A stretch of DNA of 63,903 nucleotides, filler included, from Octopus bimaculoides (taxonomy: Eukaryota): the NCBI RefSeq assembly GCF_001194135.2. It is 8 parts of 7 records of this genome, joined end to end, with 100 filler letters (N's around TTAATTAATTAA, not from the genome) between each part and the next. Parts side by side here need not be neighbours in the genome. Positions count along the whole stretch, not along the records: positions 20,830 to 42,065 come from NC_068987.1; 7 more parts are not named here. One strand, 5' to 3'. Below, in pieces: positions 22,331 through 41,640 of this stretch. The notes under the pieces were generated by a model that was not told where the DNA came from, made no database searches, and worked only from the letters and a program-made list of their open reading frames with translations. Both the position numbers and the translations under genes were made by a program. The stretch's first letter is position 1. The number at the start of each line of letters is the position of its first letter.

Positions 22331-23479
22331 GAAATATTGGAAATTAAAACAGTGTGTTCCCATATTCTGTGCATAGTTAAGAACATGTTTGGTGCAACGG
22401 AAGCAGTATCTGTAATGAATAGCAACCCTTATTTCGAACGTAACATGGATATACTTTGGGAACACCATAACACCGTTCTGAGAAAGCTATTCGTATAAGC
22501 ATATAGTGCTAAAACGCAGCGGAAAAAAATCCCCTATCAGCAGTGGAATTACTAAATCACGTGATGTCTGTTTGTAATTCATCAGTTGTAATTATCCACT
22601 ATCATTCTGTGGTAGTCAAATTTCGTCCGAACTGATATGTAGAAAAATAGTGACCAATCAGTTACTAGTGTTATAAATAGAGAGCTGTTCAAAAAGCCTG
22701 GTATTTGACAGTCACTTATTAGTGCCTTTAAGTATGAGCTGACAATAACAGTCTCGAGACAGATGGAAACTCATGTACATAGAAGTACTGATGACTGAGG
22801 CTTGCATGAGGAACAAATTCCTAACGTCCAAGAAAGGTCAAAAGTAAGTTCTTTGTACTTAGTAGGAGTCAGCTGTCAGGCGTCATTGAGAAACTATTGA
22901 GGAGACTGGAAAGGTGTTTCGTTACAGTATGAGACACATCATATATCTGAGCGTCGAACAAGTGATGGAAACTTGACAAGCAACACTAGGCAAATCCACT
23001 GAACGCTTAGATACATTGACATAGCATTCTTGCGAAGATTATCTGTCTACAATTGCCCTTTAGGGGGTCTTGATATCTACAGTAAATGATTTTGAGATAC
23101 GGGTCAGACGATTCCCTCCGAAGAAGCAGACAATACCTAAGATCTTGATCAAAATTGACCTATACGTGTAAAGCAACACGTTGATGCTCTCCGTAAGCAA
23201 CATGAAAGAAAGCCATATATTTACCTGTACAAGTATACTGAAATGCAGAAAATACTGTGATCCAAATGTCTCTTATATTATTATTGAGAGGATAACTATA
23301 CGGAAATCGAGGGTAGAAGGAGCAGATGTTGTGCTGTCGTAATGTCACGACTAATACAAAGTATCATCAGGCATGGTTATGTGTGGAAGAGCAGGCCGAA
23401 ATAACATAACAATGTCTTGTGACAATAAGGCACATAAAAAGAGGAGTCTGATGGCTGAAGCTGTAGTGTGTGTATGTAA

Positions 23480-24150
23480 CAAGAGAGAGTGAGCAGTATC
23501 TTTGGCAACTATGCGCCTGGACAAGACAGAATCAAAAAGTGGTACGTAGAACTTATGATTCGACTATTGGGACGCCTAGATCTAAACAAAAAAAGATCAG
23601 CCTGTCGATGGAATTATAGCAAATCCATTGATTCTTCTACAAAGGGAAGGCGGACTCTTTTTTTTTTACGGAAATTGATTCTGAAAAGCATTTTCAATTG
23701 TTCCAAATCTTAGCGGACACCAACTGCGGTTGGATTAGTCATTGCTAGCGACTCCGCCTAGTGCAAAGAAGCAGCGAACCACTGCAGTGTGGAATTTTCC
23801 ATCACGGATATCAGATTCGCGATCCTGTTTTCTGATAGCAGGATTGTGTATCTGTAATAGACACCCACATGTATTTTTATGTGCCTTCTTATTGTCACAA
23901 GACTACGAGATAAAAGGGAAATGGAAGACGAATTTTAGGCGCTCAAATACTAGAGCAATAAGATCTCTAATACCCAACCTGGCGTTGATCACAGAAATTT
24001 CCAAGTAAATAATTTATCACAATTCACTGTTCCTTGCGAAGATCACCTTCAAGAGTCAATGGGGAGAATAGGGCAATATATATTGAACTTCTCGTGGCGA
24101 TGGATACTGCTAGTTGATTAAGATAGAATGCAGATGTTTCGAAATCACGC
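23480..24150 (+). mobile_element. Highly decayed Tx1/L1-like LINE (APE endonuclease region)
   Basis: SIFGNYAPGQD (VYAP-like) and a later GKWKTNF (G.WKLN motif) in the expected order; many lesions. Confidence 0.4.
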
Positions 24151-24544
24151 ATGTGATCATGACCCACAATGGAATGAATATCACATCGGCTATTATAAGA
24201 ACGGCCATAAAATAATCCACAAAAACAGCATATGTTACTTCAAGTGGTTATAGATGGAATAGTACGATCTGTAGTGACGCTACCTGAACAAATTTGACCA
24301 CAAATCGAGATTTGATCAGCAAAATATGACGGTGACTTATTTTTGAAAGACCTACAAATAATTTTGGTATCAGTTAGCATCATTGATGAATTCTGAAGTG
24401 ATTATAAAAACGTGCGTGCATAAACGTACATAAACACACGTACGCACACACTCACACACACTCACACACACACATACACACACATGCACACACACAAGTT
24501 GTGTATACGTTTGTGAATCCGTAATGAACACCCATATATATGTA

Positions 24545-25794
24545 TTGGGTTGGCAACTAAGTTCCCGCGGTTTTTTTTTAATTGGGGAATTTATTGCGTT
24601 TTTAAATTTTGGAATCAATTTTTTTCGAGAATTTTGAATCATTTTGGAATCTATTTTTTTTCGAGAATTTTGAATCATTTTGGAATCTATTTTGTTTTTC
24701 TTTATCTAGTTAAGTTTAGTTAATCTTTGTTTATTTTCAGATCATTAAAATGGAATGTCAAGTTAAGAAAAACGAACATTTTCGACACCTTCTTTTTGCT
24801 TTTAATCAAGGTTCTAAGGCCGCAAAAGCTGCCCGCGACATTTGTGCTGTGTATGGAGAGGGTGCCATTGCTGAAAGAACCGTGATTAGTATGCCAAGTT
24901 CAAAAATGGAAATTTTGACCTCAAAGTCGCACCTCGTTCTGGCCGTCCAGTTGAGTTCGATGAAGAGCGATTAAACCAAATTTTGCACGAAAATTCTCGT
25001 CAAACGACAAGGGAACTAGCAGAAACGCTCCTTCACTCGATGGGAAAGGTTCAGGAGTATGGAGCATGGTTCCGCATGCTTTAAGTAACAACAACAAAAA
25101 TCAACGAGCCGCAATGTCCGCTGGTTTGCTTGCTCGTCACCGCTCAACTCATGGACACAAGCAACGATTTCTTTGGCGATGAAAACTGGTGCCTGTACAT
25201 TAATATGAAGCAGCGTAAGGAATGGCTTAACCCCGGTAAACAAGCGATACCGCGCGTGAAACAAGATCTTCATCCGCGTAAAACGATGTTTTACATATGG
25301 TGGGACTGGGAAGGAATTAACCATTACAAATTGCTTGAACGGAACCAAACGGTCAACGCGGAACTCTATTTTCAACAGATGGAACGACTCAACACGGCTA
25401 TTCAAGGGAAAAGATCTAATCGGCAACATGGAGTTCTTCTGCTGCACGACAACACCCGCCCTCATATCGCCAATATGAACAAGGAAGCCATTCAAACGCA
25501 TGGCTGGGAAGTGCTACCACACCCGCCGTACTCTCCTGATTTGGCACCAACTGATTTCCACCTCGTTCGATCTCTTTCAAATGTGATGCAGAATTGAGAG
25601 CTTAGTTAGATCAATTTTTCGAGTCGACTTCGGGTGATTTCTACCTACGAAGTATTGAAAATCTTGTTCAACGTTGCGAAGAAGTTGTAAACAACAAGAG
25701 TGAATACATTATTGATTAATTAGTTGTTATTTTTTATTAAACCTTAGAAAAAAATTAATTTTAAAAAACAGCGGGAACTTAGTTGTCAACCCAA
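24545..25794 (+). mobile_element. Mariner transposon (DD34D, mellifera-like TIR), near full length
   Basis: TA|ttgggttggcaactaagttcccgcggtttttt ... aaaaaacagcgggaacttagttgtcaacccaa|TA: about 30-bp TIRs with 2 mismatches, 1250 bp in total. Confidence 0.97.
24750..25719 (+). pseudogene. Mariner transposase, frameshifted
   Basis: MECQVKKNEHFRHLL...GDENW...WWDWEGI...HDNTRPH...HPPYSPDLAPTDFHL; 34 residues between the 2nd and 3rd catalytic Asp; ends EYIID* at 25717-19; several indels. Confidence 0.95.
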
Positions 25795-26126
25795 TATACA
25801 TACAGATAGATACACCTTAATCTACACAGGAGACACACACATACTAACATACATACAGACATATGTTCATACATACAAACATATATTCATGCATACATAT
25901 ATAAAAACACTCATACACACGCACACTCTCACACCCAAACACGCACACACATACATATACACATGCTATTTCGGTTAGGAACATTGGATCTCGAAGTTGA
26001 TAATAAAGCTTTAAATAGTAATGTGTAAATAGTGGATTAAAATACCTTTTGAATGAAAAATGTTGATGGTTTACTCCTCAGCTCCGAAGTTTATAAATGT
26101 TTATGAAGTCATCAACATATACATAC

Positions 26127-26177
<51 letters not shown>

Positions 26178-26212
26178 TGTGTATGTGTGNNNNNNNNNNN
26201 NNNNNNNNNNNN

Positions 26213-27953: not shown

Positions 27954-30432
27954 TAATTTATATGTTTCGCATTCGTAGAGTGCAAATATGTACCTAGATG
28001 TGTCCCACCATCTTATCATGTGCCATTCATATTTTGCTGATGCTTTACTATTCAAGACTTCCACCAACAGGAAATATTACTAATGTATATGGCGACGAAG
28101 ATGGAGACTTCAATAACATTAACAAACAGAACAAAAACGACAATAAAATAGCCAATAATCAAACAAATACAAAAGCAATAGAACATTCCCGTTAAATTTC
28201 GTATTACTTATATAAACGAAATATCTATATCGATAATTTTTACCTTAATTAAATGAGCTTAAATATAATATAATATAGTCGTTTCAAAAACCAATATGTT
28301 CCTAAAATGAACGTCGAAATATAGTACGAAATAAAGTAAAGGAAAAATAAACAAGATATAAAATAAAACAAACCAAGCGAAATTATATCTTAACTTATGT
28401 TACATATATCCGATGTGATAGTAATTGAATGTCTTCCGGTTTATTTGCTTTTATTATGATATTTAGGAAACCGAGTATAGTTTTCTGATAGGAATATATT
28501 CAAAGAAAAGAAATCTGAATTCAAGAGGTATACAAATAAGGAACAGTGATGGGGAATGAGTAAGTGAGCGGGGAAGTTCTAGTAGTTCCAATATGAATGT
28601 TTGTCATATGAATTGAATATATGAGATTGCGTTTCGTAAAGCATGATTGGTTACTTTCGTTCCTGTATACACGCACACACACACACACATACACACAGAG
28701 AGAAGCACTTAGTACGTACAAACTCACGCAATACTCACAAACTCATACACATACGTGGGAACATATGTAATGATATTACATATATGTCTATATATATTTG
28801 TATATATTATTGTATAAATTATATTATATTTCGTAAATGGTTTCACAAACAAAGCCAATCGTGTCGCCAGTGCGTTTTGTAGACAATTTATGGTCGTTGG
28901 TTTACGTAGATGTTGATCGGTGTACGATCCATTGATTGGTGTACCGCCTTTAGGATACTTTTGAGACTACAGCTTTGAATTTAGGCTTGAAAGTTCTTCG
29001 GCATTTAGGACAGTTCCGCGTTTAGGACATACGTGACAATCTACTGGCGTGCTGAGCAAAGAAAAATATCTTTTAAGGTACAAGTCATTGAATATTTTCT
29101 CAGTGAGAAAATATAGTATTTAATGCTGTTCCTTGTTTTTATATACACTTATAATATTACATATACCAATATTTTAATCTAATTCTGATTCACGTCTGTA
29201 TATTAATGAAGTTTAAAATATTTCAAAGACATCTCCTGTGAAACACTTCGCTTACCTTCCAATATCGTCAGTATGCTGTCCAGTCTACGAAGCCTAAAAG
29301 ATCTTGGTAATTAACACAGTGTTTTACACAGACACATATTAGCATTAGTTAGAAAATACACGATCAGAGAAGACTCCTCGTCAGAGACCCCTACCAACCT
29401 GTTTTATTAGATGTATGATGATATAGAACTTCATCATCAAGATTCTCGACGCAGAAGAAGTGACACCGAAGATAATGAAAGTGATCCACCTTTTCTAGGT
29501 TTGTAGCAAGGAATCGATATAATGTCTCAGCTGTTAAAATTTGGCAAATGGTATTATTTTTATGTACATATGAGGTGGTAAGGATCTTTTCGAGGAATAT
29601 ATTTCTTAGAAATCTGCTACATTATTGCCATACACGCATTGGAACTCACTAAGGGAACGTCTTGATTTTGGAATGACCAGAGCGAAACTGAATCGTTTGC
29701 CATGTATTCACAGATGAAGTTAGAAAATACTCCCATGATCACTGCTGCGATTACCATACTCCTTTTACTGTGAATTAAACTTCTCACGACTCACTGTTAT
29801 TAATGTTAACTGTTGCCACCATGTCGTCCTTGAGGCTCCGCAGGATTTTCCTATACATCTGAAGATAGCCATAAGGATATACGGCATCCCATTCAACTCC
29901 TTTTCATAACGATTCAAATGCTTTAGAGGTGGACTGCCATAAAAATGGCCTGACGTTTTAAATTCTCTTTTCTTTGCAGCGTTGCAAACATCATGGCTAT
30001 TCTACCACGCGATGGTCTTAAACGTCGTTGTGTTTCTAGAACGATCTACTCGCTAGGTTATTTCGGCTACTTGTTCATACTGCAAGCGAGGTTCTTGCTT
30101 GTTGCAAACAGGGAAATTTTCAGATAAATTTCCGGATCCGTCCCTAATTATCAGCGTACAACTAGTATGCGATCCTGTACAATCGTATATAACCAACGGT
30201 CTGTACTGATGAGAAACAGATACTTTCGGTAAGAATGTATTGATTTCGAAACATGTCTACAGGTAATTGTATTCTTTTATGTAATTTTCACTGTTCTTGT
30301 CCGTTTTACGTTTTTGGTGCTTCGCTAAATTCAATTTTGAGAATTATCCGGTCTTAGTAGACACATGACATGTGATCTTCTTCTAGCACATTAGCAGTCC
30401 ACCTAGTGGCCTCCGTTATATATATTTTATAG

Positions 30433-30474
<42 letters not shown>

Positions 30475-30479
30475 GTATG

Positions 30480-30517
<38 letters not shown>

Positions 30518-30929
30518 TAGATATATATGTATGAGAGTAGTATAAAATATTTATACGCACACATATACAGTGAGAGACGTCCGTTTATGTCTGTGTGGTG
30601 CATCTGTGTTTGCGTATGTGTGTTTGTGAGAAAGGGACAGAGAGAGAGAGTGATAGAAAGAGAGAGATTGCATGTGTATATGTTGTTTTAAGTATTATAC
30701 TCATAATTATTAATCGAGTACAACACAATACAATAGTAGCAATATAGTTCAAAGGTTGAAATGCTGTAACTAACGTCCTTGTTGTTAGAATTCGACTCAA
30801 CCCTAAGTAAGTAAGCATATAGTCAAAGACATTCCATTCTAACCATGACATACTCCTAGTATTTCCTTCAAACGTATCGGATTACATTGAAAACTGTGCT
30901 TCATGTTATCACTTTCAGCGCTTGCATAG

Positions 30930-30977
30930 ATGTTACCTATTTGGTTGGATTAACTAACAATACGTTTCCACCAGCAG
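30930..30977 (+). CDS. Candidate 48-nt symmetric (phase 1-1) second coding exon
   Basis: Acceptor cactttcagcgcttgcatAG|, open frame (Y)VTYLVGLTNNTFPPA(G), donor CAG|GTACAG; extends the hydrophobic leader of the 27273 exon. Confidence 0.33.
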
Positions 30978-31041
30978 GTACAGTTTTTAGTTTTGATTTC
31001 TGTTCCTTGTTTTTGAGTTTTTCTTTCGTCGGATACTGTTA

Positions 31042-31262
31042 AATATTGGTTTCAAGTTTTGGCACAAGACCAACAAGTATAGCGGATGGAGGTTAGTCGA
31101 TTACTTTGACCCTAGTGCTTAACTGGTGCTTATTTCATCGACTTCTAAGGAATGAAAGACAAAGTCGACCTCGGCGGAATTTGAACTCAGAATGTAAAGA
31201 CGAAAGAAATGCCGCTATGTAATTTGCCCGATGTGCTTACGATTCTGCTAGATCACCGCCTT
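31042..31262 (-). mobile_element. tRNA-derived SINE (same family as 7998)
   Basis: aaagtcgacctcggcggaatttgaactcag is the reverse complement of the family core. Confidence 0.85.
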
Positions 31263-31403
31263 GATTCTATCAAACATTGAGCAAATGTATTTTAGAGCTT
31301 GCTACAGCGATTGAAACAGCAATGTTTCGTTTCGAATACATTGCCTATCCGCTATTCTAAATATTTTACTTACATTGAAGTGGAATATAATTGATTAATA
31401 TTG

Positions 31404-31615
31404 ATTTCATATTTTGGTACAAGGCGGGCAATTCCAAAGGAAAGGCTAAATCGATTACATAGACCCTAGTGCTCAACTGATACTTATATTTTTTCAGCCC
31501 CGAATAGATGAAATGCATAGTTGACCTCGGTGGAATTTGAGCTCAGAATACAAAGAGGAAAGAAATGCCGTTAAGCATTTTGTTCGACTCTAACGATTCT
31601 GCCAGCTTGTCGCTT
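31404..31615 (-). mobile_element. tRNA-derived SINE (same family as 7998), second tandem copy
   Basis: gttgacctcggtggaatttgagctcagaat...gattctgccagct. Confidence 0.8.
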
Positions 31616-33929
31616 TTAATATATTAAACATTAGGCAAATATATTCTAGAGTTTGCTACAGCGATTGAAACAGCAATGTTTCGCTTGGAATACATTGCCT
31701 ATCAGCTATCCTAAACATATTAGTTACATTGAAGTGCTATATAATTGATTAATATTGTGGTGACACTGTTTTCCTTCAATTCTTTACACAAACCATGGAA
31801 ATTTCCACAGAAATAACTCTCCCTGTCATTCTCTTTCACAAATCTCACTAATGATATTTATCATTTAACATTGACAGGATTTTACTCATACATGAAGGAA
31901 ACAGCAAAATAAGAAAAAATAAAACTACACTAGTTGTGTTTCTTCATATTAAATAAAGCACTTAGTGTGCTTCCCTGTTTGAAAAGCTTCACTAGATCTC
32001 CACTTCTTTGAGAAAAATAATCCTCATATCTTTCACTAGCTTAAAATTATCAGACAATGAACGGAAATGAACGGATTAAAGAAGAAAAACAAACATACCT
32101 TCAATACAAACAAACATTAAAAAAAAATCACAGTACATTTAGAAAGTGTAACATTTCTGTAAATGAGTAGAATTATTAATAACATAGGAAGAAAACAAAC
32201 TACATAATGTGAATGTAGCTATAATCTCACATTCATGTGTAGGGAAGCAACTATGAATGCAGCTTTTAAAAGTAAACGTCATTCCGCTTTCTTCATACAC
32301 AAAATTTTCATTCCACAACTGTTACATTCCACAGATAAATCATGAACAGTAAATGCATAAATGTATGTATTAATATACATGTGTGCATGTGTAAGTGTTT
32401 GTACGTATGTATTTAATTATCTATGTATGCATGTATGTATGAATATATGTATGTATTACTTAAGTGCTTATTTTATCGATTACCACTTTAATAAAATTCA
32501 TATGTGCAGCCAAAACGCATTCCCAAATTTAGTGCATATCTGATGAGAAACGAGACAGCTGCTCAACTACGTGAAACTAACACTTGTAGATATTCACTTT
32601 GTAAATATCCAAATAGATGTGAAACGTATATATAATTATTTGAATGTGTATTACTCCAGCATGACGGTCTTTTAGGTCTGAATTTCATGTATCACATAAG
32701 TCATATTATTGCGCCTAACAACTGACCATAATATATAAACGGAAGCTAGTGTCCGAAGAGCGTGTTAGACGACTTAGTCTACAACTTAAAAGCTTGTAAA
32801 AGTATATAGACCATTGGAAATTATTGCCGGAACCGTCAATTTCTTTTTTTCAATATAGGGGTCCTCTGAAATTTTGGATTTGAACAAATGAGGAATATCT
32901 CTGAGCTTCAGCGGGTTTCATCGATTACAACACGCTGTGTTTTGTTAACCATAAATATTTGTTGAAGTAATCTCTGTCAGTGTCATAAGGGAACATTGCC
33001 TATTTGGAATATACTCAACAAATATGGCTGTTTTGGTGCCGACAGCCGAAGACTCTTTCTAAGACGTGTGAAAAGTGACATAACCATCCGGCACGCACTC
33101 ATCCAATTTCCTGCATAGCTCATTTGCGAGTTGGTGTCAAACAGATGCTGATAATTAGGGACGGATCCGGAAATCAGCCGACACTCCCATGATAGCCAAA
33201 GCATCGCCTTCCTCTCACAATTAAGAACAGGTATTCTTCTGTCTTGTAGATATAGCGAAGAACACTGTATTATCGACGCGTTTCAAAGTTTGAGGAACAT
33301 GGTTTTCCTCTCATCAAATTCTTAATGTACAATTGGTGAAAAAAATCAGGGTGATAAATGAGTGACGGCCACCGAGTAAATTTGAACAAAAACAGTTGAC
33401 AGTGACTGGTTTTATGTCTAAGAATACCTGCACTTGGTGTGTAGCTAGCAGTCAAAAGTGGGGGAAGATGTTTGTCTTTAGTCTGCCAGACTGATCTGGT
33501 GGAATGTGGGATATTTTACAATTTTATATACCACTCTCTTCTTGCTTTTATTTGTTATTTGTTATTTTTGCTATCCAAACATTACGTAGTTACTGATTAA
33601 ATAATGTCTTTATAACTGTATTGGTCTCACACGAGACCGTTCCCTAATAACGTGGGAAACTTAAATATTTTATACAAAAGCCTTTCTGCAAGGCCAGATA
33701 AATGACGTTCTCCACCATATTTTATTCTCACCCTAGGTAGCTCTACTAAAGGCAGTCATGGAAGTATAAAACAGCGTGAAGTGAGATCGGCAGAGAAGCA
33801 GTGACACCTTTTCAATAATATCAAAGTTACTGTGTCAGGATGTGATAATTATTACCGAGACCGGTTGAACACCTTATAGAAGACTAAGAGGCTTAGGCTC
33901 TCACACGAATCAATTATGTGATGTTGAGT

Positions 33930-34920
33930 GCTGTTTCAGGCAAGATAAAACATTGATTTAAATACGTTTTTTTCGTGACCCAGAAGGTAATCAAGTTTTC
34001 CTATAAGTGGGCAGCCGTAAGGCCGACAACGAGGTTCTTGAATTATACGCTTCGGCTAGAAATGATGAATTACATTTCCTTAAGCGACGAGAGATACTCC
34101 TAAAAGGATTTCACACATTAGTGTCAGTGGCCGATTGGAATTACATTTCGGATGTACGCACGTATTGTGTAGATACAGCCGATAGGTGTAGGTCAAAAGT
34201 TTCCGAAGATTTCTCAACAACTGTCTGATAAATTTCGCTTTGATTTCTTGCAGATTCGTTAATTTGGATTCTGACCTAAATACAAAGTGTCGTCTAGGAT
34301 GTGTTCAGATAGAATTTTCATCGGGCTACAACATAGAACTGACGTACTTTGTCCACAGTTCTGTTAGTTGGATATCTGCACGAGAGAAGGCGCAGAACAT
34401 ATCTGAGATGTCGTGATGCGGCATACCCTGAAGCGGTTCTGGTCTTAGCCGCTGCTATGCAGTGTATTTGCATTAGCAATGTATGCAGCTGGTGTCGAAT
34501 AGCTGTTGTGGCGTGCAGAAGGTCTCCCACAACCAGAGAAATTTGTAGTAAAATCGACAATCCGCCTTCATTTAGACGTGAAGGGCGTCTAGCTTGCTAT
34601 TCTTGAGTTTTGTCTTTATGGAAACGAAAATAATAGAGTGAACTGGTGTCAAAGGTTTGGAGACAGGCATTATACTGTCTTTCAAGCTCGTATCAGTTAC
34701 TCCAAGTACCAACAAACGATGACGATGAAACTAGTAAAGGAGATGCTGCTTTCTATTGGGCTCACTGAATGATGGGAGAGAGCTGTGAGACTGACGAGAT
34801 CGCCTGTGTCTGACTTTAGTTTTTCAAGTAGGAGGAAAGGACCAGAGCGAAAACACTTTAATTCATGGCATATAACAAAATATTTCAAGCGTTTATATGG
34901 GATTTTACGTGAGACAGCAC
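33930..34920 (+). mobile_element. Decayed Tx1/L1-like LINE ORF2 (APE endonuclease and downstream)
   Basis: FRDPEGN...VLELYASARND...LVSVADWNYISDVRTYCV aligns by eye with ..VYAP...GDWNAILD.R.D..; later KYFKRLYG. Confidence 0.55.
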
Positions 34921-35239
34921 AGGTAACTATCTCAGATTCCGAGAAAAGATTTTGTTACAATTTCTTTTTTTATATATCAATAAATTAGCGAATTTATTTA
35001 TTGTTCTTCCTGCGTAAATTAAATTTTGGTAGAATCCTTATTCGTCATTGAATTATTGGCAGAATTTTAGAATCGATCCTGAGATCAATAAAAAGACAAT
35101 GCTCACCATCTAGATTGACATCATTAGCTACATCATCATCATCATCATTATCATCATCATATCATCATCAGCATCATTGTCATTAATATTGCCATCAACA
35201 TCATGGTCAGTAGTAGTAGTAGTATCTAAGTAGTATGGT

Positions 35240-37200
35240 GAAAATTACCAAACCAGGAGTGCCACCAGAACTAGATTTCTGATGGATTCTCGCTTGTGTG
35301 GTATTGGAGGAGAGTGAAACTCTCCTGCAGGACAAGAGATCAAGGAAGGAGAACTGAACTGGTCACACTGGCTGTACTCTTTCATGTAAATCCAGCTAGA
35401 GAGGATCCTAGACATGATCTGTCTGCTGATAGGAACAGAGTCAAGATTGTGTATGGAGAGCAGTGAACCGAGATTCCATGTCTGTGGAATGAAGGATCTT
35501 CTATAGGCGTTCTACACACAGAACAGAAACAAAAGGGAAGAAAGGAGGGCTCCAACGCTGATGTCACCACCACTGCTACAACATCAACAACAAGGTAAGA
35601 AAAGTGACAGCAACAACAGACACACTGGAAAAATCAAACTGCCAAAATCCACAAAACCAAAATGACGGAGGCGGTATCGATGTCTCCAGCGCTAGCACCT
35701 GCAGCAGCAGCAGCAGCAGCAGAAAGCAGTAGTAACAGAGACAGTAGAAGCAGCAGCACCGGTAGCAACAGTCGCAACAGCACTACTACTACTCACCACC
35801 AACATCGATGAGAATATGAGCAGGGAGGACCATCCTGGGCGTCCTTCACCACAATTTTTCCATCTCAACCTCTCTCGAACACACAGGCAACTACAGAAGC
35901 ACAAATAAACACTCGCCACATCAGGGATGGATTCCACAGACTATGGTTTCTTCATATCTCGAAGTGAAGACGAGGAGGTACCCAAAAACCGAAGCAAAAG
36001 GAATACAAGAAAATAACACCTGGTTTCACACCAACCCACGCAGTGAACGTCGCAGAGAGCGCTCTCGTAGCAGGCACGCCGATAATAGCACCAACTCCGC
36101 CAGCTCCAAACCGTCAACACAATGCTGCCACCAACACAATCACAAACCCACCTCGCCCCAAACAAATGCATACAAAAGAACAATCAATGACATAGACTCC
36201 AAATTTCGAGCTAATGTGGAGAGCCAACATAGAATATATGGCAGTCAAAACTCGAAATAACGAGATTGAAAAGAGAGATGCAATACCGAGTTCGCATGAC
36301 ACTAAAACCATATTCAAACATTAGAGAAGTTTTCCCCTACGACGCAGAAACTCCTAATGTAAAAGCAACTAAAAGACTTTTAAAGATGTTCCTAAAGGAA
36401 CACCAGCCAGAGCCGATGGACGGGCTACCCAACTGCTAACAACACCAAGAGGGTAATTAACCCTGGTCTTTTCTTTTCTCTCAAATATTTCAGTCCAACA
36501 TGGCAATTACTAGACAGTTTATATCAATGTTTGTGGCCTAATGTTGTCCTAACAGCCAATGAATTCAGATTGCTAACTTTGGATATGTTGGCCGACAGTG
36601 AGACCCAGAGTTTTGAATATGTTCACATTAGTCCTGATTCTTAAAAACTTTGAGATCTAAGCATCACTGGATCGACCACGAATGAAGGACGGGGTGACAG
36701 CGTTGTTTAGGAAAGGCTTGGCTCTCGAGTTACAGACGATCTTCCTGGACATGAACGATAAATTGGTGGTCCTGGATGTGATTATTATCGACATTGTTGG
36801 TTTTAAACTACTCGCTGTGTACACCCCGATTGGCGCGGGAAATCCACACTTCTTCAGACGCTAGGACGGTTTCCTCGAGACGCCTTGCATTTTAGGTCCA
36901 GTGGGCGTCTGAAACGCCACTTGGACACACGCTTAGATAGAGTGGAGCTCACAAACTTACTCAGACGCTTCGAATTGGCTGACAGGTACTGACTGGATTT
37001 CTCGAAAGCGCCAATGTGGACATGAGCAAATAGCATTGGGCAAATGGCATTATGAACAAATGGCAAGTGGACACGAGCAAATGGCATCGTGTTCTCTCGA
37101 TCGGATGTAGTATATTTTGAAGGCCTGCAGATGAACGTAACATACAGTGTCTACAATTCAAAGTTGTTGGCTATACAGACCACAAATTTTGGTCTGTACG
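35240..37200 (+). mobile_element. Tx1/L1-like LINE 5' relic: ORF1 with degenerate zinc knuckle plus ORF2 APE endonuclease
   Basis: ORF1-like PRFHVCGMKDLL*AFYT (CCHC relic, about 35470-35520). Endonuclease GVTALFRKGL...LVVLDV...LLAVYTP...LDRVE...ADRY*LD...SLDR...GYTDHKF. Confidence 0.8.
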
Positions 37201-40554: not shown

Positions 40555-41294
40555 CAACAACAACAACGACAACAGCAGCAAGAAGAAGAACACAACAAAG
40601 ACAGCGACAACATCTACAACAAGAAAGGGTTGTATTTTGAGTTCTTACCTACGGTAGTGACAAAATTTCTTTTAAATATATGTTAGAATATGATAAAAGA
40701 CAGCGGTGATGATAATGTCGACAAGAAGGAGGAAGAGGCGGAAGGTGCTGATGGTGATGATAAGCAATGGTGAGGAAAATGTGGTGGGGTGAAGAAAACG
40801 AAATAATAAAGAAAAGAATATGAGAAATAATTATTCAAAAAAAAATAGTAATAGCAAGGTGGCAGTGCTGCCGCTGCTTATACTGCTGCTAACACTGCTG
40901 CCCCTGCTGTTGTTCCTGATGCTACTGCTACCGCTGCCACTACTTCTCCTACTGCTGTTCCTGCTGTTGGTGTTAGTACTGGTGCTAGGTGTAGTAGGGG
41001 GTGGCATTTTGAGATTGGGATGATGATTGGTGCCTGTGATTGTCGTTGTGGTGGATTTCATGATGGTGTCGTTGTTGCTGGTGTTGGTGGTGGTGGTGGT
41101 GGTGGTGTTCTTTATGATGGTGATGATGATGGTGGAAATGATGATGGTGCTTGTTGTTGTGGCCGTGGTTGTAATGATGAAATTGATGAAGAGGAAGGGG
41201 ATGGAGGTGATGATGAAGACGACTACGATGACGAAGATGAAGAGGAGGAGAGGAATAACGATGGTGATGATGATGACGACGATTACAATGACGT

Positions 41295-41327
<33 letters not shown>

Positions 41328-41380
41328 CGATGACGATGATGATGATGATGAGATGACAGTGATGTTCATGATAATAGAAA
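40555..41380. repeat. Mixed trinucleotide low-complexity tract (CAA, CTG/CTA, GGT, GAT)
   Basis: Visible; source of the spurious Leu-, Asp- and Met-rich ORFs. Confidence 0.85.
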
Positions 41381-41640
41381 AGAAGAAATTTTTTTTTTCA
41401 AATAACAATAGTCATATATTCGGTTTAAGAGACAAAAACAATCAACTAGACACTTCCATTTTGTTGTCTCCCAAGATATCGATGAAGTTTTCGTAAAGTT
41501 CTTCAGGGGCGTCTGCTTAATTCGATTTTTTCTTGATTGGCAGCTGCGTCCCACAGTGAAGGAAGTAAATCTATTTCAAAAAAGAGAAAAAAAATCCTCG
41601 TGGAAAGCGTCTGAGCAAAGGAAAAAAAAAGAATAAAGAC

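What the first reader, a model, noticed from the sequence alone, without database searches (positions are those of the whole stretch)
30128..33174. Isolated perfect 28-bp inverted pair 3 kb apart, bracketing the candidate cassette exon
ATTTCCGGATCCGTCCCTAATTATCAGC (30128-30155) is the exact reverse complement of GCTGATAATTAGGGACGGATCCGGAAAT (33147-33174). Similarity stops abruptly on both sides, I see no target duplication, and neighbouring sequence is heavily decayed. Hypotheses: (a) a long-range pre-mRNA duplex that loops out the 48-nt exon, or serves as an ADAR substrate in this editing-rich lineage; (b) a duplicated regulatory module, since it packs TGATAA (GATA), TAATTA (homeodomain) and CCGGAAAT (ETS-like) into 28 bp; (c) a locally templated repair insertion or the TIRs of an eroded 3-kb element.
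Basis: partly seen in the sequence, partly recalled or inferred. Interest (0 to 1): 0.7.

Follow-up and report, generated by a model that had tools for sequence, protein, structure and literature searches.

The report
Isolated 28-bp inverted duplication, origin unresolved
Two perfect, oppositely oriented copies of a 28-base sequence really do sit 3 kb apart, but everything testable points to a scar of DNA break repair or rearrangement rather than a splicing, editing or regulatory device, and the supposed exon between them has no support.

Summary
ATTTCCGGATCCGTCCCTAATTATCAGC (30128-30155) is the exact reverse complement of 33147-33174. The piece holds no other copy, even at 3 mismatches, and chance cannot explain the pair.

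Similarity ends at the 28 nt on all four sides in gapped alignments and k-mer tests. There is no target-site duplication. No transposase or reverse transcriptase remnant was found in the frames scanned, and no protein homologue for the ORFs spanning the arms.

The 3-kb interior looks like ordinary old non-coding DNA: microsatellites and a 354-bp tandem duplication only 78% identical. The perfect arms must therefore be younger than their surroundings.

My best reading (about 0.35) is a small inversion with one staggered break, whose fill-in duplicated the 28-mer in inverted orientation. Close rivals are a template-switch insertion and transposon terminal repeats that lack a target duplication.

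The 48-nt "cassette exon" matches no known protein. The RNA-duplex idea is thermodynamically possible (-51 kcal/mol) but has no supporting evidence.

Genome-wide copy number and conservation could not be tested, because no collection here holds this organism's DNA.

In passing, I found a hammerhead-ribozyme-like motif 44 nt inside the left arm.

The parts
30128..30155 (+). Left arm of the inverted pair: ATTTCCGGATCCGTCCCTAATTATCAGC. It contains the 8-bp palindrome CGGATCCG. It begins immediately after the TAA stop of a 44-codon ATG ORF (29995-30127).
33147..33174 (-). Right arm, the exact reverse complement of the left arm. It lies inside a 99-codon open frame on the minus strand (32986-33282) that has no real homologue.
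30156..33146 (.). The 2991-bp interior: non-coding-looking, AT-rich DNA. Under the favoured model this is the inverted segment.
   Evidence: No Pfam domain above its cut-off in the frames scanned: all six frames to 32600, minus-strand frames only beyond 32600. No ORF with homologues. Composition shows no step at the arms.
30428..30540 (.). (CA)n/(TA)n/(TATG)n microsatellite inside the interior.
   Evidence: It is the source of the sub-threshold pseudo-miRNA Rfam hits.
31037..31757 (+). Two tandem copies of a ~354-bp unit, 78% identical. The first ~230 bp of each copy look SINE-like. This shows that the interior sequence is old.
   Evidence: (D3, D5, D8)
30930..30977 (+). It is not supported as an exon.
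30199..30264 (+). Type I hammerhead-ribozyme-like motif, 44 nt inside the left arm. It has a CUGAUGA core, a GAAA, a GUC cleavage triplet, a 6-7-bp helix I, a long interrupted helix II and a palindromic ACAUGU 'helix III'. Its relation to the inverted pair is unproven.
   Evidence: architecture compared with PMC4209133

Best explanation
The pair is a single-event, DNA-level inverted duplication of a 28-bp stretch of otherwise unremarkable sequence. It is a repair scar, not a device.

The most likely history is that the ~3-kb segment between the arms was cut out by two breaks and rejoined in reverse. One of the breaks was staggered by 28 nt. Filling in the two overhangs left the same 28 nt on both the fixed and the inverted end, so after end joining the 28-mer flanks the inverted segment in opposite orientations. 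This is the staggered-break inversion model of Ranz et al. 2007.

Shown: the pair is real, perfect and isolated. It has sharp edges, no target duplication and no extended homology. The interior and flanks are much more decayed than the arms.

Inferred: that the interior is inverted relative to the ancestral state, that one break was staggered, and that the event is recent and neutral.
For: - The inverted repeat is perfect (28/28) and non-random.
- Similarity ends exactly at the arms on all four sides, as expected when only the overhang is duplicated.
- There is no direct repeat at the outer flanks. End joining makes none, whereas transposition would.
- The interior is ordinary old DNA with no mobile-element genes found: microsatellites and a tandem duplication 78% identical. 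The nearby mariner terminal repeats are 90% identical. By arithmetic, at 10% divergence a 28-mer pair stays perfect with probability 0.05, and at 22% with probability 0.001. The duplication is therefore younger than its surroundings, which fits a rearrangement of pre-existing sequence better than an old element.
- Literature (PMC1885836): 59% of Drosophila inversions carry inverted duplications of non-repetitive breakpoint sequence. In 12 of 18 such inversions only one breakpoint region is duplicated. Duplication sizes go down to 46 bp.
Against: - No outgroup or second assembly could be consulted, so the inversion itself is not demonstrated.
- At 28 bp the duplication is shorter than the shortest one (46 bp) reported by Ranz et al.
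- The documented cases are megabase-scale inversions in flies, not 3-kb ones in this lineage.
- The same end product can arise from a template switch without any inversion.
- Composition and skew profiles show no reversal inside the segment, although 3 kb is too short for that test to have power.
Confidence: 0.35

Rival explanations
1. Template-switch or polymerase-theta-type templated insertion. A break or stalled fork at one arm's site was repaired by copying 28 nt from the opposite strand 3 kb away, and the interior was not inverted.
For: The length (28 nt), perfect identity, sharp edges, absence of a target duplication and arbitrary sequence all fit.
Against: No microhomology is visible between either arm's flanks and the sequence next to the putative template, in any of the four priming geometries I checked by eye. 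Microhomology could, however, be hidden inside the identical tract. From general knowledge, templated insertions are usually copied from within tens to hundreds of bp, not 3 kb.
Confidence: 0.25
2. Terminal inverted repeats of a 3047-bp non-autonomous DNA transposon whose target-site duplication was never made or was lost.
For: A 28-bp terminal inverted repeat with an unrelated interior is the classic anatomy. The same piece holds a mariner with ~40-bp terminal repeats and another ~29-bp inverted pair 490 bp apart, so such elements are present in this genome.
Against: - No target duplication of any length from 2 to 10 bp, although perfect repeats imply a young insertion whose duplication should be intact.
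- No transposase remnant in the frames scanned.
- No subterminal repeat motifs.
- From memory, the termini (ATTTCC...) match no superfamily motif.
- The interior carries an old 78%-identical tandem duplication and microsatellites, which is inconsistent with a young element.
- No other copy in 21 kb.
Confidence: 0.17
3. Remnant of a Penelope-like (PLE) retroelement insertion unit. The main copy would run on the + strand from 30156 to 33174, and a very short (28-nt) inverted 5'-truncated copy of its 3' end would sit at 30128-30155.
For: - A hammerhead-like type I motif with a palindromic helix III lies 44 nt from the putative 5' end on the + strand.
- PLE hammerheads sit in the pseudo-LTRs, and metazoan ones have exactly this short palindromic helix III (PMC4209133).
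- PLE units are ~3-4 kb, are often flanked by inverted repeats made by an inverted truncated copy, carry 30-40-bp 'tails', prefer microsatellites and sometimes lack target duplications (PMC8557442; PMC3846280; PMC11167929).
Against: - No direct pseudo-LTR pair: 30156-30430 has no match near 32900-33146.
- No second hammerhead.
- No RT or GIY-YIG signal in any scanned frame.
- The hammerhead reaches only 15 bits against an Rfam gathering score of 56.
- A fully decayed ORF is incompatible with perfect arms.
Confidence: 0.07
4. A selected long-range RNA duplex: intronic complementary sequences that loop out an exon, promote back-splicing or recruit ADAR.
For: The two arms would form a perfect 28-bp duplex of -51.2 kcal/mol on a transcript of either strand. 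From general knowledge, that length is in the range known to support back-splicing and ADAR binding.
Against: - The bracketed 'exon' has no protein or domain support.
- There is no evidence that the region is transcribed.
- Perfect DNA-level complementarity without G-U pairs or compensatory changes indicates recent copying, not maintenance.
- Each arm is predicted to be partly engaged in local structure.
Confidence: 0.05
5. Assembly artefact, for example a mis-oriented contig with a retained overlap in a gapped, scaffolded assembly.
For: The piece contains an N gap (about 26190-26212), so it is a scaffolded draft. A 28-nt overlap would equal k-1 for k=29.
Against: A flipped contig with retained overlaps would give two crossed inverted pairs, one at each junction. 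The sequences next to the arms are not complementary. There is no gap at either arm.
Confidence: 0.05
6. A duplicated regulatory module (GATA, homeodomain and ETS-like sites).
For: Only that the 28-mer contains TGATAA, TAATTA and CCGGAAAT.
Against: Short motifs like these occur in any 28-mer of this composition. Exact 28/28 identity reflects copying, not convergence. No conservation or chromatin data are available.
Confidence: 0.02

Closest known systems
Inverted duplications at inversion breakpoints from staggered breaks (Ranz et al. 2007, PLoS Biol, PMC1885836)
   Same: An inverted copy of non-repetitive sequence sits at the two ends of a segment, often from only one breakpoint. There is no target duplication and no repeat family is involved.
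   Different: This duplication is 28 bp, against a minimum of 46 bp and a median of 321 bp. The segment is 3 kb rather than megabases, the lineage is different, and the inversion itself is not demonstrated.
Short template-switch or templated-insertion mutations (replication template switching; polymerase-theta end joining)
   Same: A short, perfect, reverse-complement copy of nearby sequence with sharp edges.
   Different: From general knowledge, the template is usually much closer than 3 kb. No junction microhomology is visible here.
Terminal inverted repeats of class II DNA transposons (for example the mariner copy at 24537-25802 in this same piece)
   Same: Inverted repeats of ~28 bp bracket an unrelated interior.
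   Different: There is no target-site duplication, no transposase remnant, no recognisable terminal motif and no second copy in the piece.
Penelope-like element insertion units with inverted pseudo-LTRs, a 'tail' and a hammerhead ribozyme (PMC8557442, PMC3846280, PMC4209133)
   Same: A ~3-kb unit is flanked by an inverted repeat. A hammerhead-like motif lies near one end on the matching strand. A microsatellite is nearby, and a target duplication is optional.
   Different: The inverted part is 28 bp, not ~200 bp. There is no direct pseudo-LTR pair, no RT/EN ORF and no second hammerhead.
Intronic complementary sequences that drive exon circularisation or skipping
   Same: A perfect ~30-bp complementary pair a few kb apart.
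   Different: No supported exon lies between them, there is no evidence of transcription, and conservation cannot be tested.

Membership tests
Class II DNA transposon (TIR element) | Terminal inverted repeats | tested here: met
   28/28 inverted pair at 30128-30155 and 33147-33174.
Class II DNA transposon (TIR element) | Target-site duplication flanking the repeats | tested here: not met
   Flanks are ...TTTTCAGATAA | ... | CAGCCGACAC.... No direct repeat of 2-10 bp is present.
Class II DNA transposon (TIR element) | Transposase gene or its remnant, or subterminal binding-site repeats | tested here: not met
   Pfam found nothing (six frames for 29000-32600, minus-strand frames only for 32500-35000). 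Subterminal k-mer sharing is at null level.
Class II DNA transposon (TIR element) | Multiple copies in the genome | not testable with these tools
   The 28-mer is absent from the metagenome, viral and prokaryotic collections. A repeat-unit control shows that the metagenome collection lacks this organism's DNA. There are only two copies in the 21-kb piece.
Staggered-break inversion with breakpoint duplication | Inverted duplication of non-repetitive sequence at the two ends of a segment, with no target duplication and no extended homology | tested here: met
Staggered-break inversion with breakpoint duplication | The segment is inverted relative to an outgroup that has a single copy of the duplicated sequence | not testable with these tools
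   No genome of this or a related species is reachable. The best protein matches to the piece's mariner are only 83-85% identical.
Templated insertion / template switch | A short copy of nearby sequence inserted at a junction | tested here: met
   A 28-nt copy lies 2991 nt away in inverted orientation.
Templated insertion / template switch | Microhomology between the primer end and the template flank | tested here: inconclusive
   None is visible outside the identical tract (by eye). Any microhomology inside the tract cannot be seen.
Penelope-like element | Hammerhead ribozyme in the pseudo-LTR | tested here: inconclusive
   My descriptor gave a single hit at 30199-30264 and 0 hits in 300 shuffles. 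Rfam gave only 15 bits against a gathering score of 56.
Penelope-like element | Direct pseudo-LTR pair flanking an RT + GIY-YIG ORF | tested here: not met
   No direct repeat between the two ends. No RT/EN domain.
Intronic complementary pair controlling splicing, back-splicing or editing | A stable duplex between the arms | tested here: met
   -51.2 kcal/mol with 28 bp paired.
Intronic complementary pair controlling splicing, back-splicing or editing | A genuine exon between the arms | tested here: not met
   The ORF holding the 48-nt candidate has no protein match at all and no Pfam domain.
Intronic complementary pair controlling splicing, back-splicing or editing | Co-transcription, conservation or compensatory change, and A-to-G signal | not testable with these tools
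   No RNA-seq data and no related genomes are available.

The most novel reading that the evidence does not exclude
The 28-mer pair may have been retained because it forms a 28-bp dsRNA stem. That stem would loop out ~3 kb of a primary transcript and so drive back-splicing or exon skipping, or act as an ADAR docking site. A further possibility is that it works together with the adjacent hammerhead-like motif to process a non-coding RNA.
Probability: 0.05. Interest if true: 0.6.

Novelty: new member of a known kind. Interest (0 to 1): 0.22.

Why it matters
If it is a repair scar, it matters little on its own. It is one more example of how small inversions or template switches leave short inverted duplications, and it gives a ready-made polarity marker for a 3-kb rearrangement once relatives are compared.

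It would matter more only if both arms prove to be conserved and co-transcribed. In that case a perfect 28-bp long-range duplex would be a clean, mutable test case for RNA-structure-driven splicing or editing.

Tried and rejected
1. Mariner/HTH reading of the ORF across the right arm (ISGSVPNYQ...). I rejected it. Pfam found nothing and the word-indexed homologue search found nothing. The full HMMER search gave only leucine-rich-repeat proteins that match through the LSGSIPNF repeat motif, which is a chance hit summed over repeats.

2. Looking up window ORFs in public assemblies to find the source or orthologous loci. The 73-aa ORF is not on record. I used the mariner ORF as an anchor, but the best hits were only 83-85% identical. 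The two contigs fetched share only the mariner with this piece.

3. Counting the 28-mer elsewhere. There were 0 hits in the metagenome, viral and prokaryotic genome collections. The control with the piece's own repeat unit gave only 3 chance hits with no further similarity, so at least the metagenome negative says nothing about copy number in the source genome.

4. Literature full-text search for the sequence: 0 hits.

5. Rfam. Only microsatellite pseudo-miRNA hits below threshold, and nothing at the arms.

6. A second CTGATGAGAAAC at 32540 as a possible downstream pseudo-LTR hammerhead. There is no flanking similarity and no fold.

7. A sub-cutoff Pfam hit to the beta2-adaptin appendage on the minus strand of the tandem unit. 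It is not backed by a PDB sequence search, so I treat it as chance.

8. GC and AT skew as an indicator of inversion. It was uninformative at this scale.

Full report
**Observation**

The 28-mer ATTTCCGGATCCGTCCCTAATTATCAGC is at 30128-30155 on the + strand, and its exact reverse complement is at 33147-33174. These are the only two matches in the window even when 3 mismatches are allowed, and none occurred in 100 dinucleotide-preserving shuffles. By arithmetic, a perfect 28-nt inverted pair in a 21-kb piece is expected about 3e-9 times by chance. The pair is therefore real and non-random.

**Extent**

- Ungapped comparison of 120 nt either side shows nothing beyond the arms.
- Gapped local alignments of the outer and inner flanks at 100, 300 and 600 nt score like shuffled sequence. 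The 600-nt inner comparison scored highest, with 7 of 200 shuffles reaching it.
- Subterminal 6-8-mer sharing is at null level.
- The outer flanks (...TTTTCAGATAA | CAGCCGACAC...) share no direct repeat of any length used by known transposon superfamilies.
- In a repeat-masked self-comparison of the piece, the notable non-simple repeats are this pair, the terminal repeats of a mariner copy (90% over 40 bp), a 354-bp tandem duplication (78%) and one weaker inverted pair near 23.4-23.9 kb.

**What lies around and between the arms**

- The interior (30156-33146) holds a (CA)n/(TA)n microsatellite, low-complexity GT/GA sequence, two tandem copies of a 354-bp unit whose first part looks SINE-like, an A-rich stretch and a (TATG)n tract.
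- Pfam scans of 29000-32600 in all six frames, and of 32500-35000 in the minus-strand frames, found no transposase, reverse transcriptase, endonuclease or other domain above its cut-off. The plus-strand frames of 32600-33146 were not scanned.
- A concatenate of every ORF that crosses or abuts either arm found no homologue among 5.8 billion proteins.
- The 99-codon frame that runs through the right arm on the minus strand was searched exhaustively against 1.84 billion representatives. It matched only two leucine-rich-repeat proteins, through their reiterated LSGSIPNF motif. That is a chance resemblance inflated by repetition.
- Rfam finds nothing at the arms. No tRNA genes were found.

**The 'cassette exon'**

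Its only open frame belongs to a 60-codon ORF. That ORF shares not even three 5-residue words with any protein in the collection and has no Pfam signal. By eye, its acceptor has a poor pyrimidine tract and its donor is GTACAG. I found no other credible coding exon in the piece, so neither a host gene nor its strand is established.

**Age**

The neighbourhood is old. The mariner terminal repeats are 90% identical and the internal tandem duplication is 78% identical. By arithmetic, a 28-nt pair stays perfect with probability about 0.05 at 10% divergence and about 0.001 at 22%. The duplication is therefore clearly younger than the sequence it sits in. The alternative would be constraint, for which there is no independent evidence.

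**Attempts to bring in related sequence**

- Exact scans for the 28-mer in the JGI metagenome, IMG/VR and GTDB genome collections gave no hit.
- As a control I scanned the metagenome collection for a conserved 20-mer of the piece's own repeat unit. The three hits share nothing else with the piece. That collection therefore holds no DNA of this organism, so its negative result says nothing about copy number in the source genome. It and the viral and prokaryotic scans mainly argue against a vector or adapter contaminant.
- The mariner ORF's best protein matches are only 83-85% identical, and the contigs fetched share only the mariner with the piece. The source genome is therefore not in the protein or contig collection either.
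- A literature full-text search for the sequence found nothing.

**Mechanism: transposon**

The anatomy is a perfect short inverted copy with knife-sharp edges, no target duplication, an arbitrary sequence, and an interior and flanks of ordinary old DNA. A transposon explains the inverted repeat. It fails on the target duplication, which should be intact if the repeats are perfect. It also fails on any transposase remnant, on subterminal motifs and on the age of the interior.

**Mechanism: Penelope-like element**

A PLE unit is worth naming for two reasons:

- Such units are often flanked by inverted repeats created by an inverted truncated copy. They carry 30-40-bp tails and sometimes lack target duplications (PMC8557442, PMC3846280, PMC11167929).
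- A hammerhead-like motif lies 44 nt inside the left arm (see below).

However, there is no direct pseudo-LTR pair, no second hammerhead and no RT/EN signal.

**Mechanism: break repair**

Two break-repair routes fit every tested feature.

- In the staggered-break inversion model, fill-in of an overhang at one breakpoint leaves that sequence at both ends of the inverted segment in opposite orientation. In Drosophila 59% of fixed inversions show this. Usually only one breakpoint region is duplicated, and sizes go down to 46 bp (PMC1885836).
- A replication or end-joining template switch that copied 28 nt from the opposite strand 3 kb away gives the same product without an inversion.

I see no junction microhomology for the template switch, and 3 kb is far for it. 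On the other side, 28 nt is short for the inversion model. I put the inversion slightly ahead (0.35 against 0.25), but only an outgroup can separate the two.

**RNA and regulatory readings**

On a transcript of either strand the arms would form a 28-bp duplex of -51.2 kcal/mol. The duplex is therefore physically plausible. Perfect DNA-level complementarity with no wobble or compensatory changes is what a fresh copy looks like, and it carries no information about selection. With no supported exon between the arms and no evidence of transcription, this remains a low-probability reading (0.05). The regulatory-module idea rests only on short motifs within the 28-mer (0.02). An assembly artefact is unlikely: a flipped contig with retained overlaps would give two crossed inverted pairs, and the sequences next to the arms are not complementary.

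**Side observation: a hammerhead-like motif**

At 30199-30264 (+) the sequence reads, 5' to 3':

- helix I, 5' strand: UCUGUA
- core: CUGAUGA
- helix II: long and interrupted (G-AAA...GAUAC / GUAU...UUU-C)
- GAAA
- ACAUGU (palindromic)
- C, followed by the cleavage site
- helix I, 3' strand: UACAGG

My type I hammerhead descriptor finds this as the only hit in the piece on either strand, and found none in 300 block shuffles. A relaxed descriptor still finds only this locus. The minimum-free-energy fold recovers helices I and II.

Rfam gives only 15 bits to a hammerhead model whose gathering score is 56, so the motif is a candidate and not a call. The short palindromic helix III is the architecture described for metazoan type I and PLE-associated hammerheads that act as dimers (PMC4209133). 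Its link to the inverted pair is unproven.

**Verdict**

The pair is most likely a neutral scar of a small rearrangement. It is an ordinary kind of feature and of low interest unless comparative or RNA data show conservation.

Noticed in passing
window 30199-30264 (+): Type I hammerhead-ribozyme-like motif: CUGAUGA core, GAAA, GUC cleavage triplet, 6-7-bp helix I, long interrupted helix II and a palindromic ACAUGU in place of helix III. It is the only descriptor hit in the piece, with 0 hits in 300 shuffles. Rfam gives only 15 bits against a gathering score of 56. The architecture matches the metazoan and Penelope-like-element hammerheads described in PMC4209133.
   Followed up: partly
window 24537-25802 (+): A ~1.27-kb mariner-family element with ~40-bp terminal inverted repeats (90% identical) and a 155-codon transposase ORF (25130-25597). 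The frame upstream is broken. The best database relatives are 83-85% identical.
   Followed up: partly
window 23413-23441 and 23874-23903: A second non-simple inverted pair (~29 bp, ~90% identical, ATGTCTTGTGACAATAAGGCACATAAAAA / its complement) brackets ~430 bp. It may be a MITE-like element. No clear target duplication was seen by eye.
   Followed up: no
window 31037-31403 and 31392-31757: A tandem duplication of a ~354-bp unit, 78% identical. From memory only, the first ~230 bp of each copy resemble an abundant octopus SINE; I could not verify this. The minus-strand translation of the unit's second part gives a sub-cutoff Pfam hit to the beta2-adaptin appendage C-terminal subdomain (20.6 bits against a 22.6-bit cut-off). 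PDB sequence searches do not back it, so it is probably chance.
   Followed up: partly
window 29995-30127 (+): A 44-codon ATG ORF (MAILPRDGLKRRCVSRTIYSLGYFGYLFILQARFLLVANREIFR*). It has a good Kozak-like context, a hydrophobic stretch and an upstream ttctttgcag acceptor-like site. Its stop codon ends exactly at the first base of the left arm. No homologue was found. This may be coincidence.
   Followed up: partly
window ~26190-26212: A run of N inside a (TG)n microsatellite. This is an assembly gap, so the source is a scaffolded draft.
   Followed up: no
window 35300-36300 and 40800-41500: A GC-richer, strongly A-over-T skewed stretch (GC 0.46, AT skew +0.38) with (GCA)n-type repeats, and further on a long (GAT)n/(GAC)n tract that gives poly-Asp ORFs. 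Their nature is unknown. No domain search was run on them.
   Followed up: no
window 30207-30218 and 32540-32551: The 12-mer CTGATGAGAAAC occurs twice in direct orientation 2.3 kb apart. The second copy has no flanking similarity to the first and does not fold as a hammerhead. It is probably chance.
   Followed up: yes
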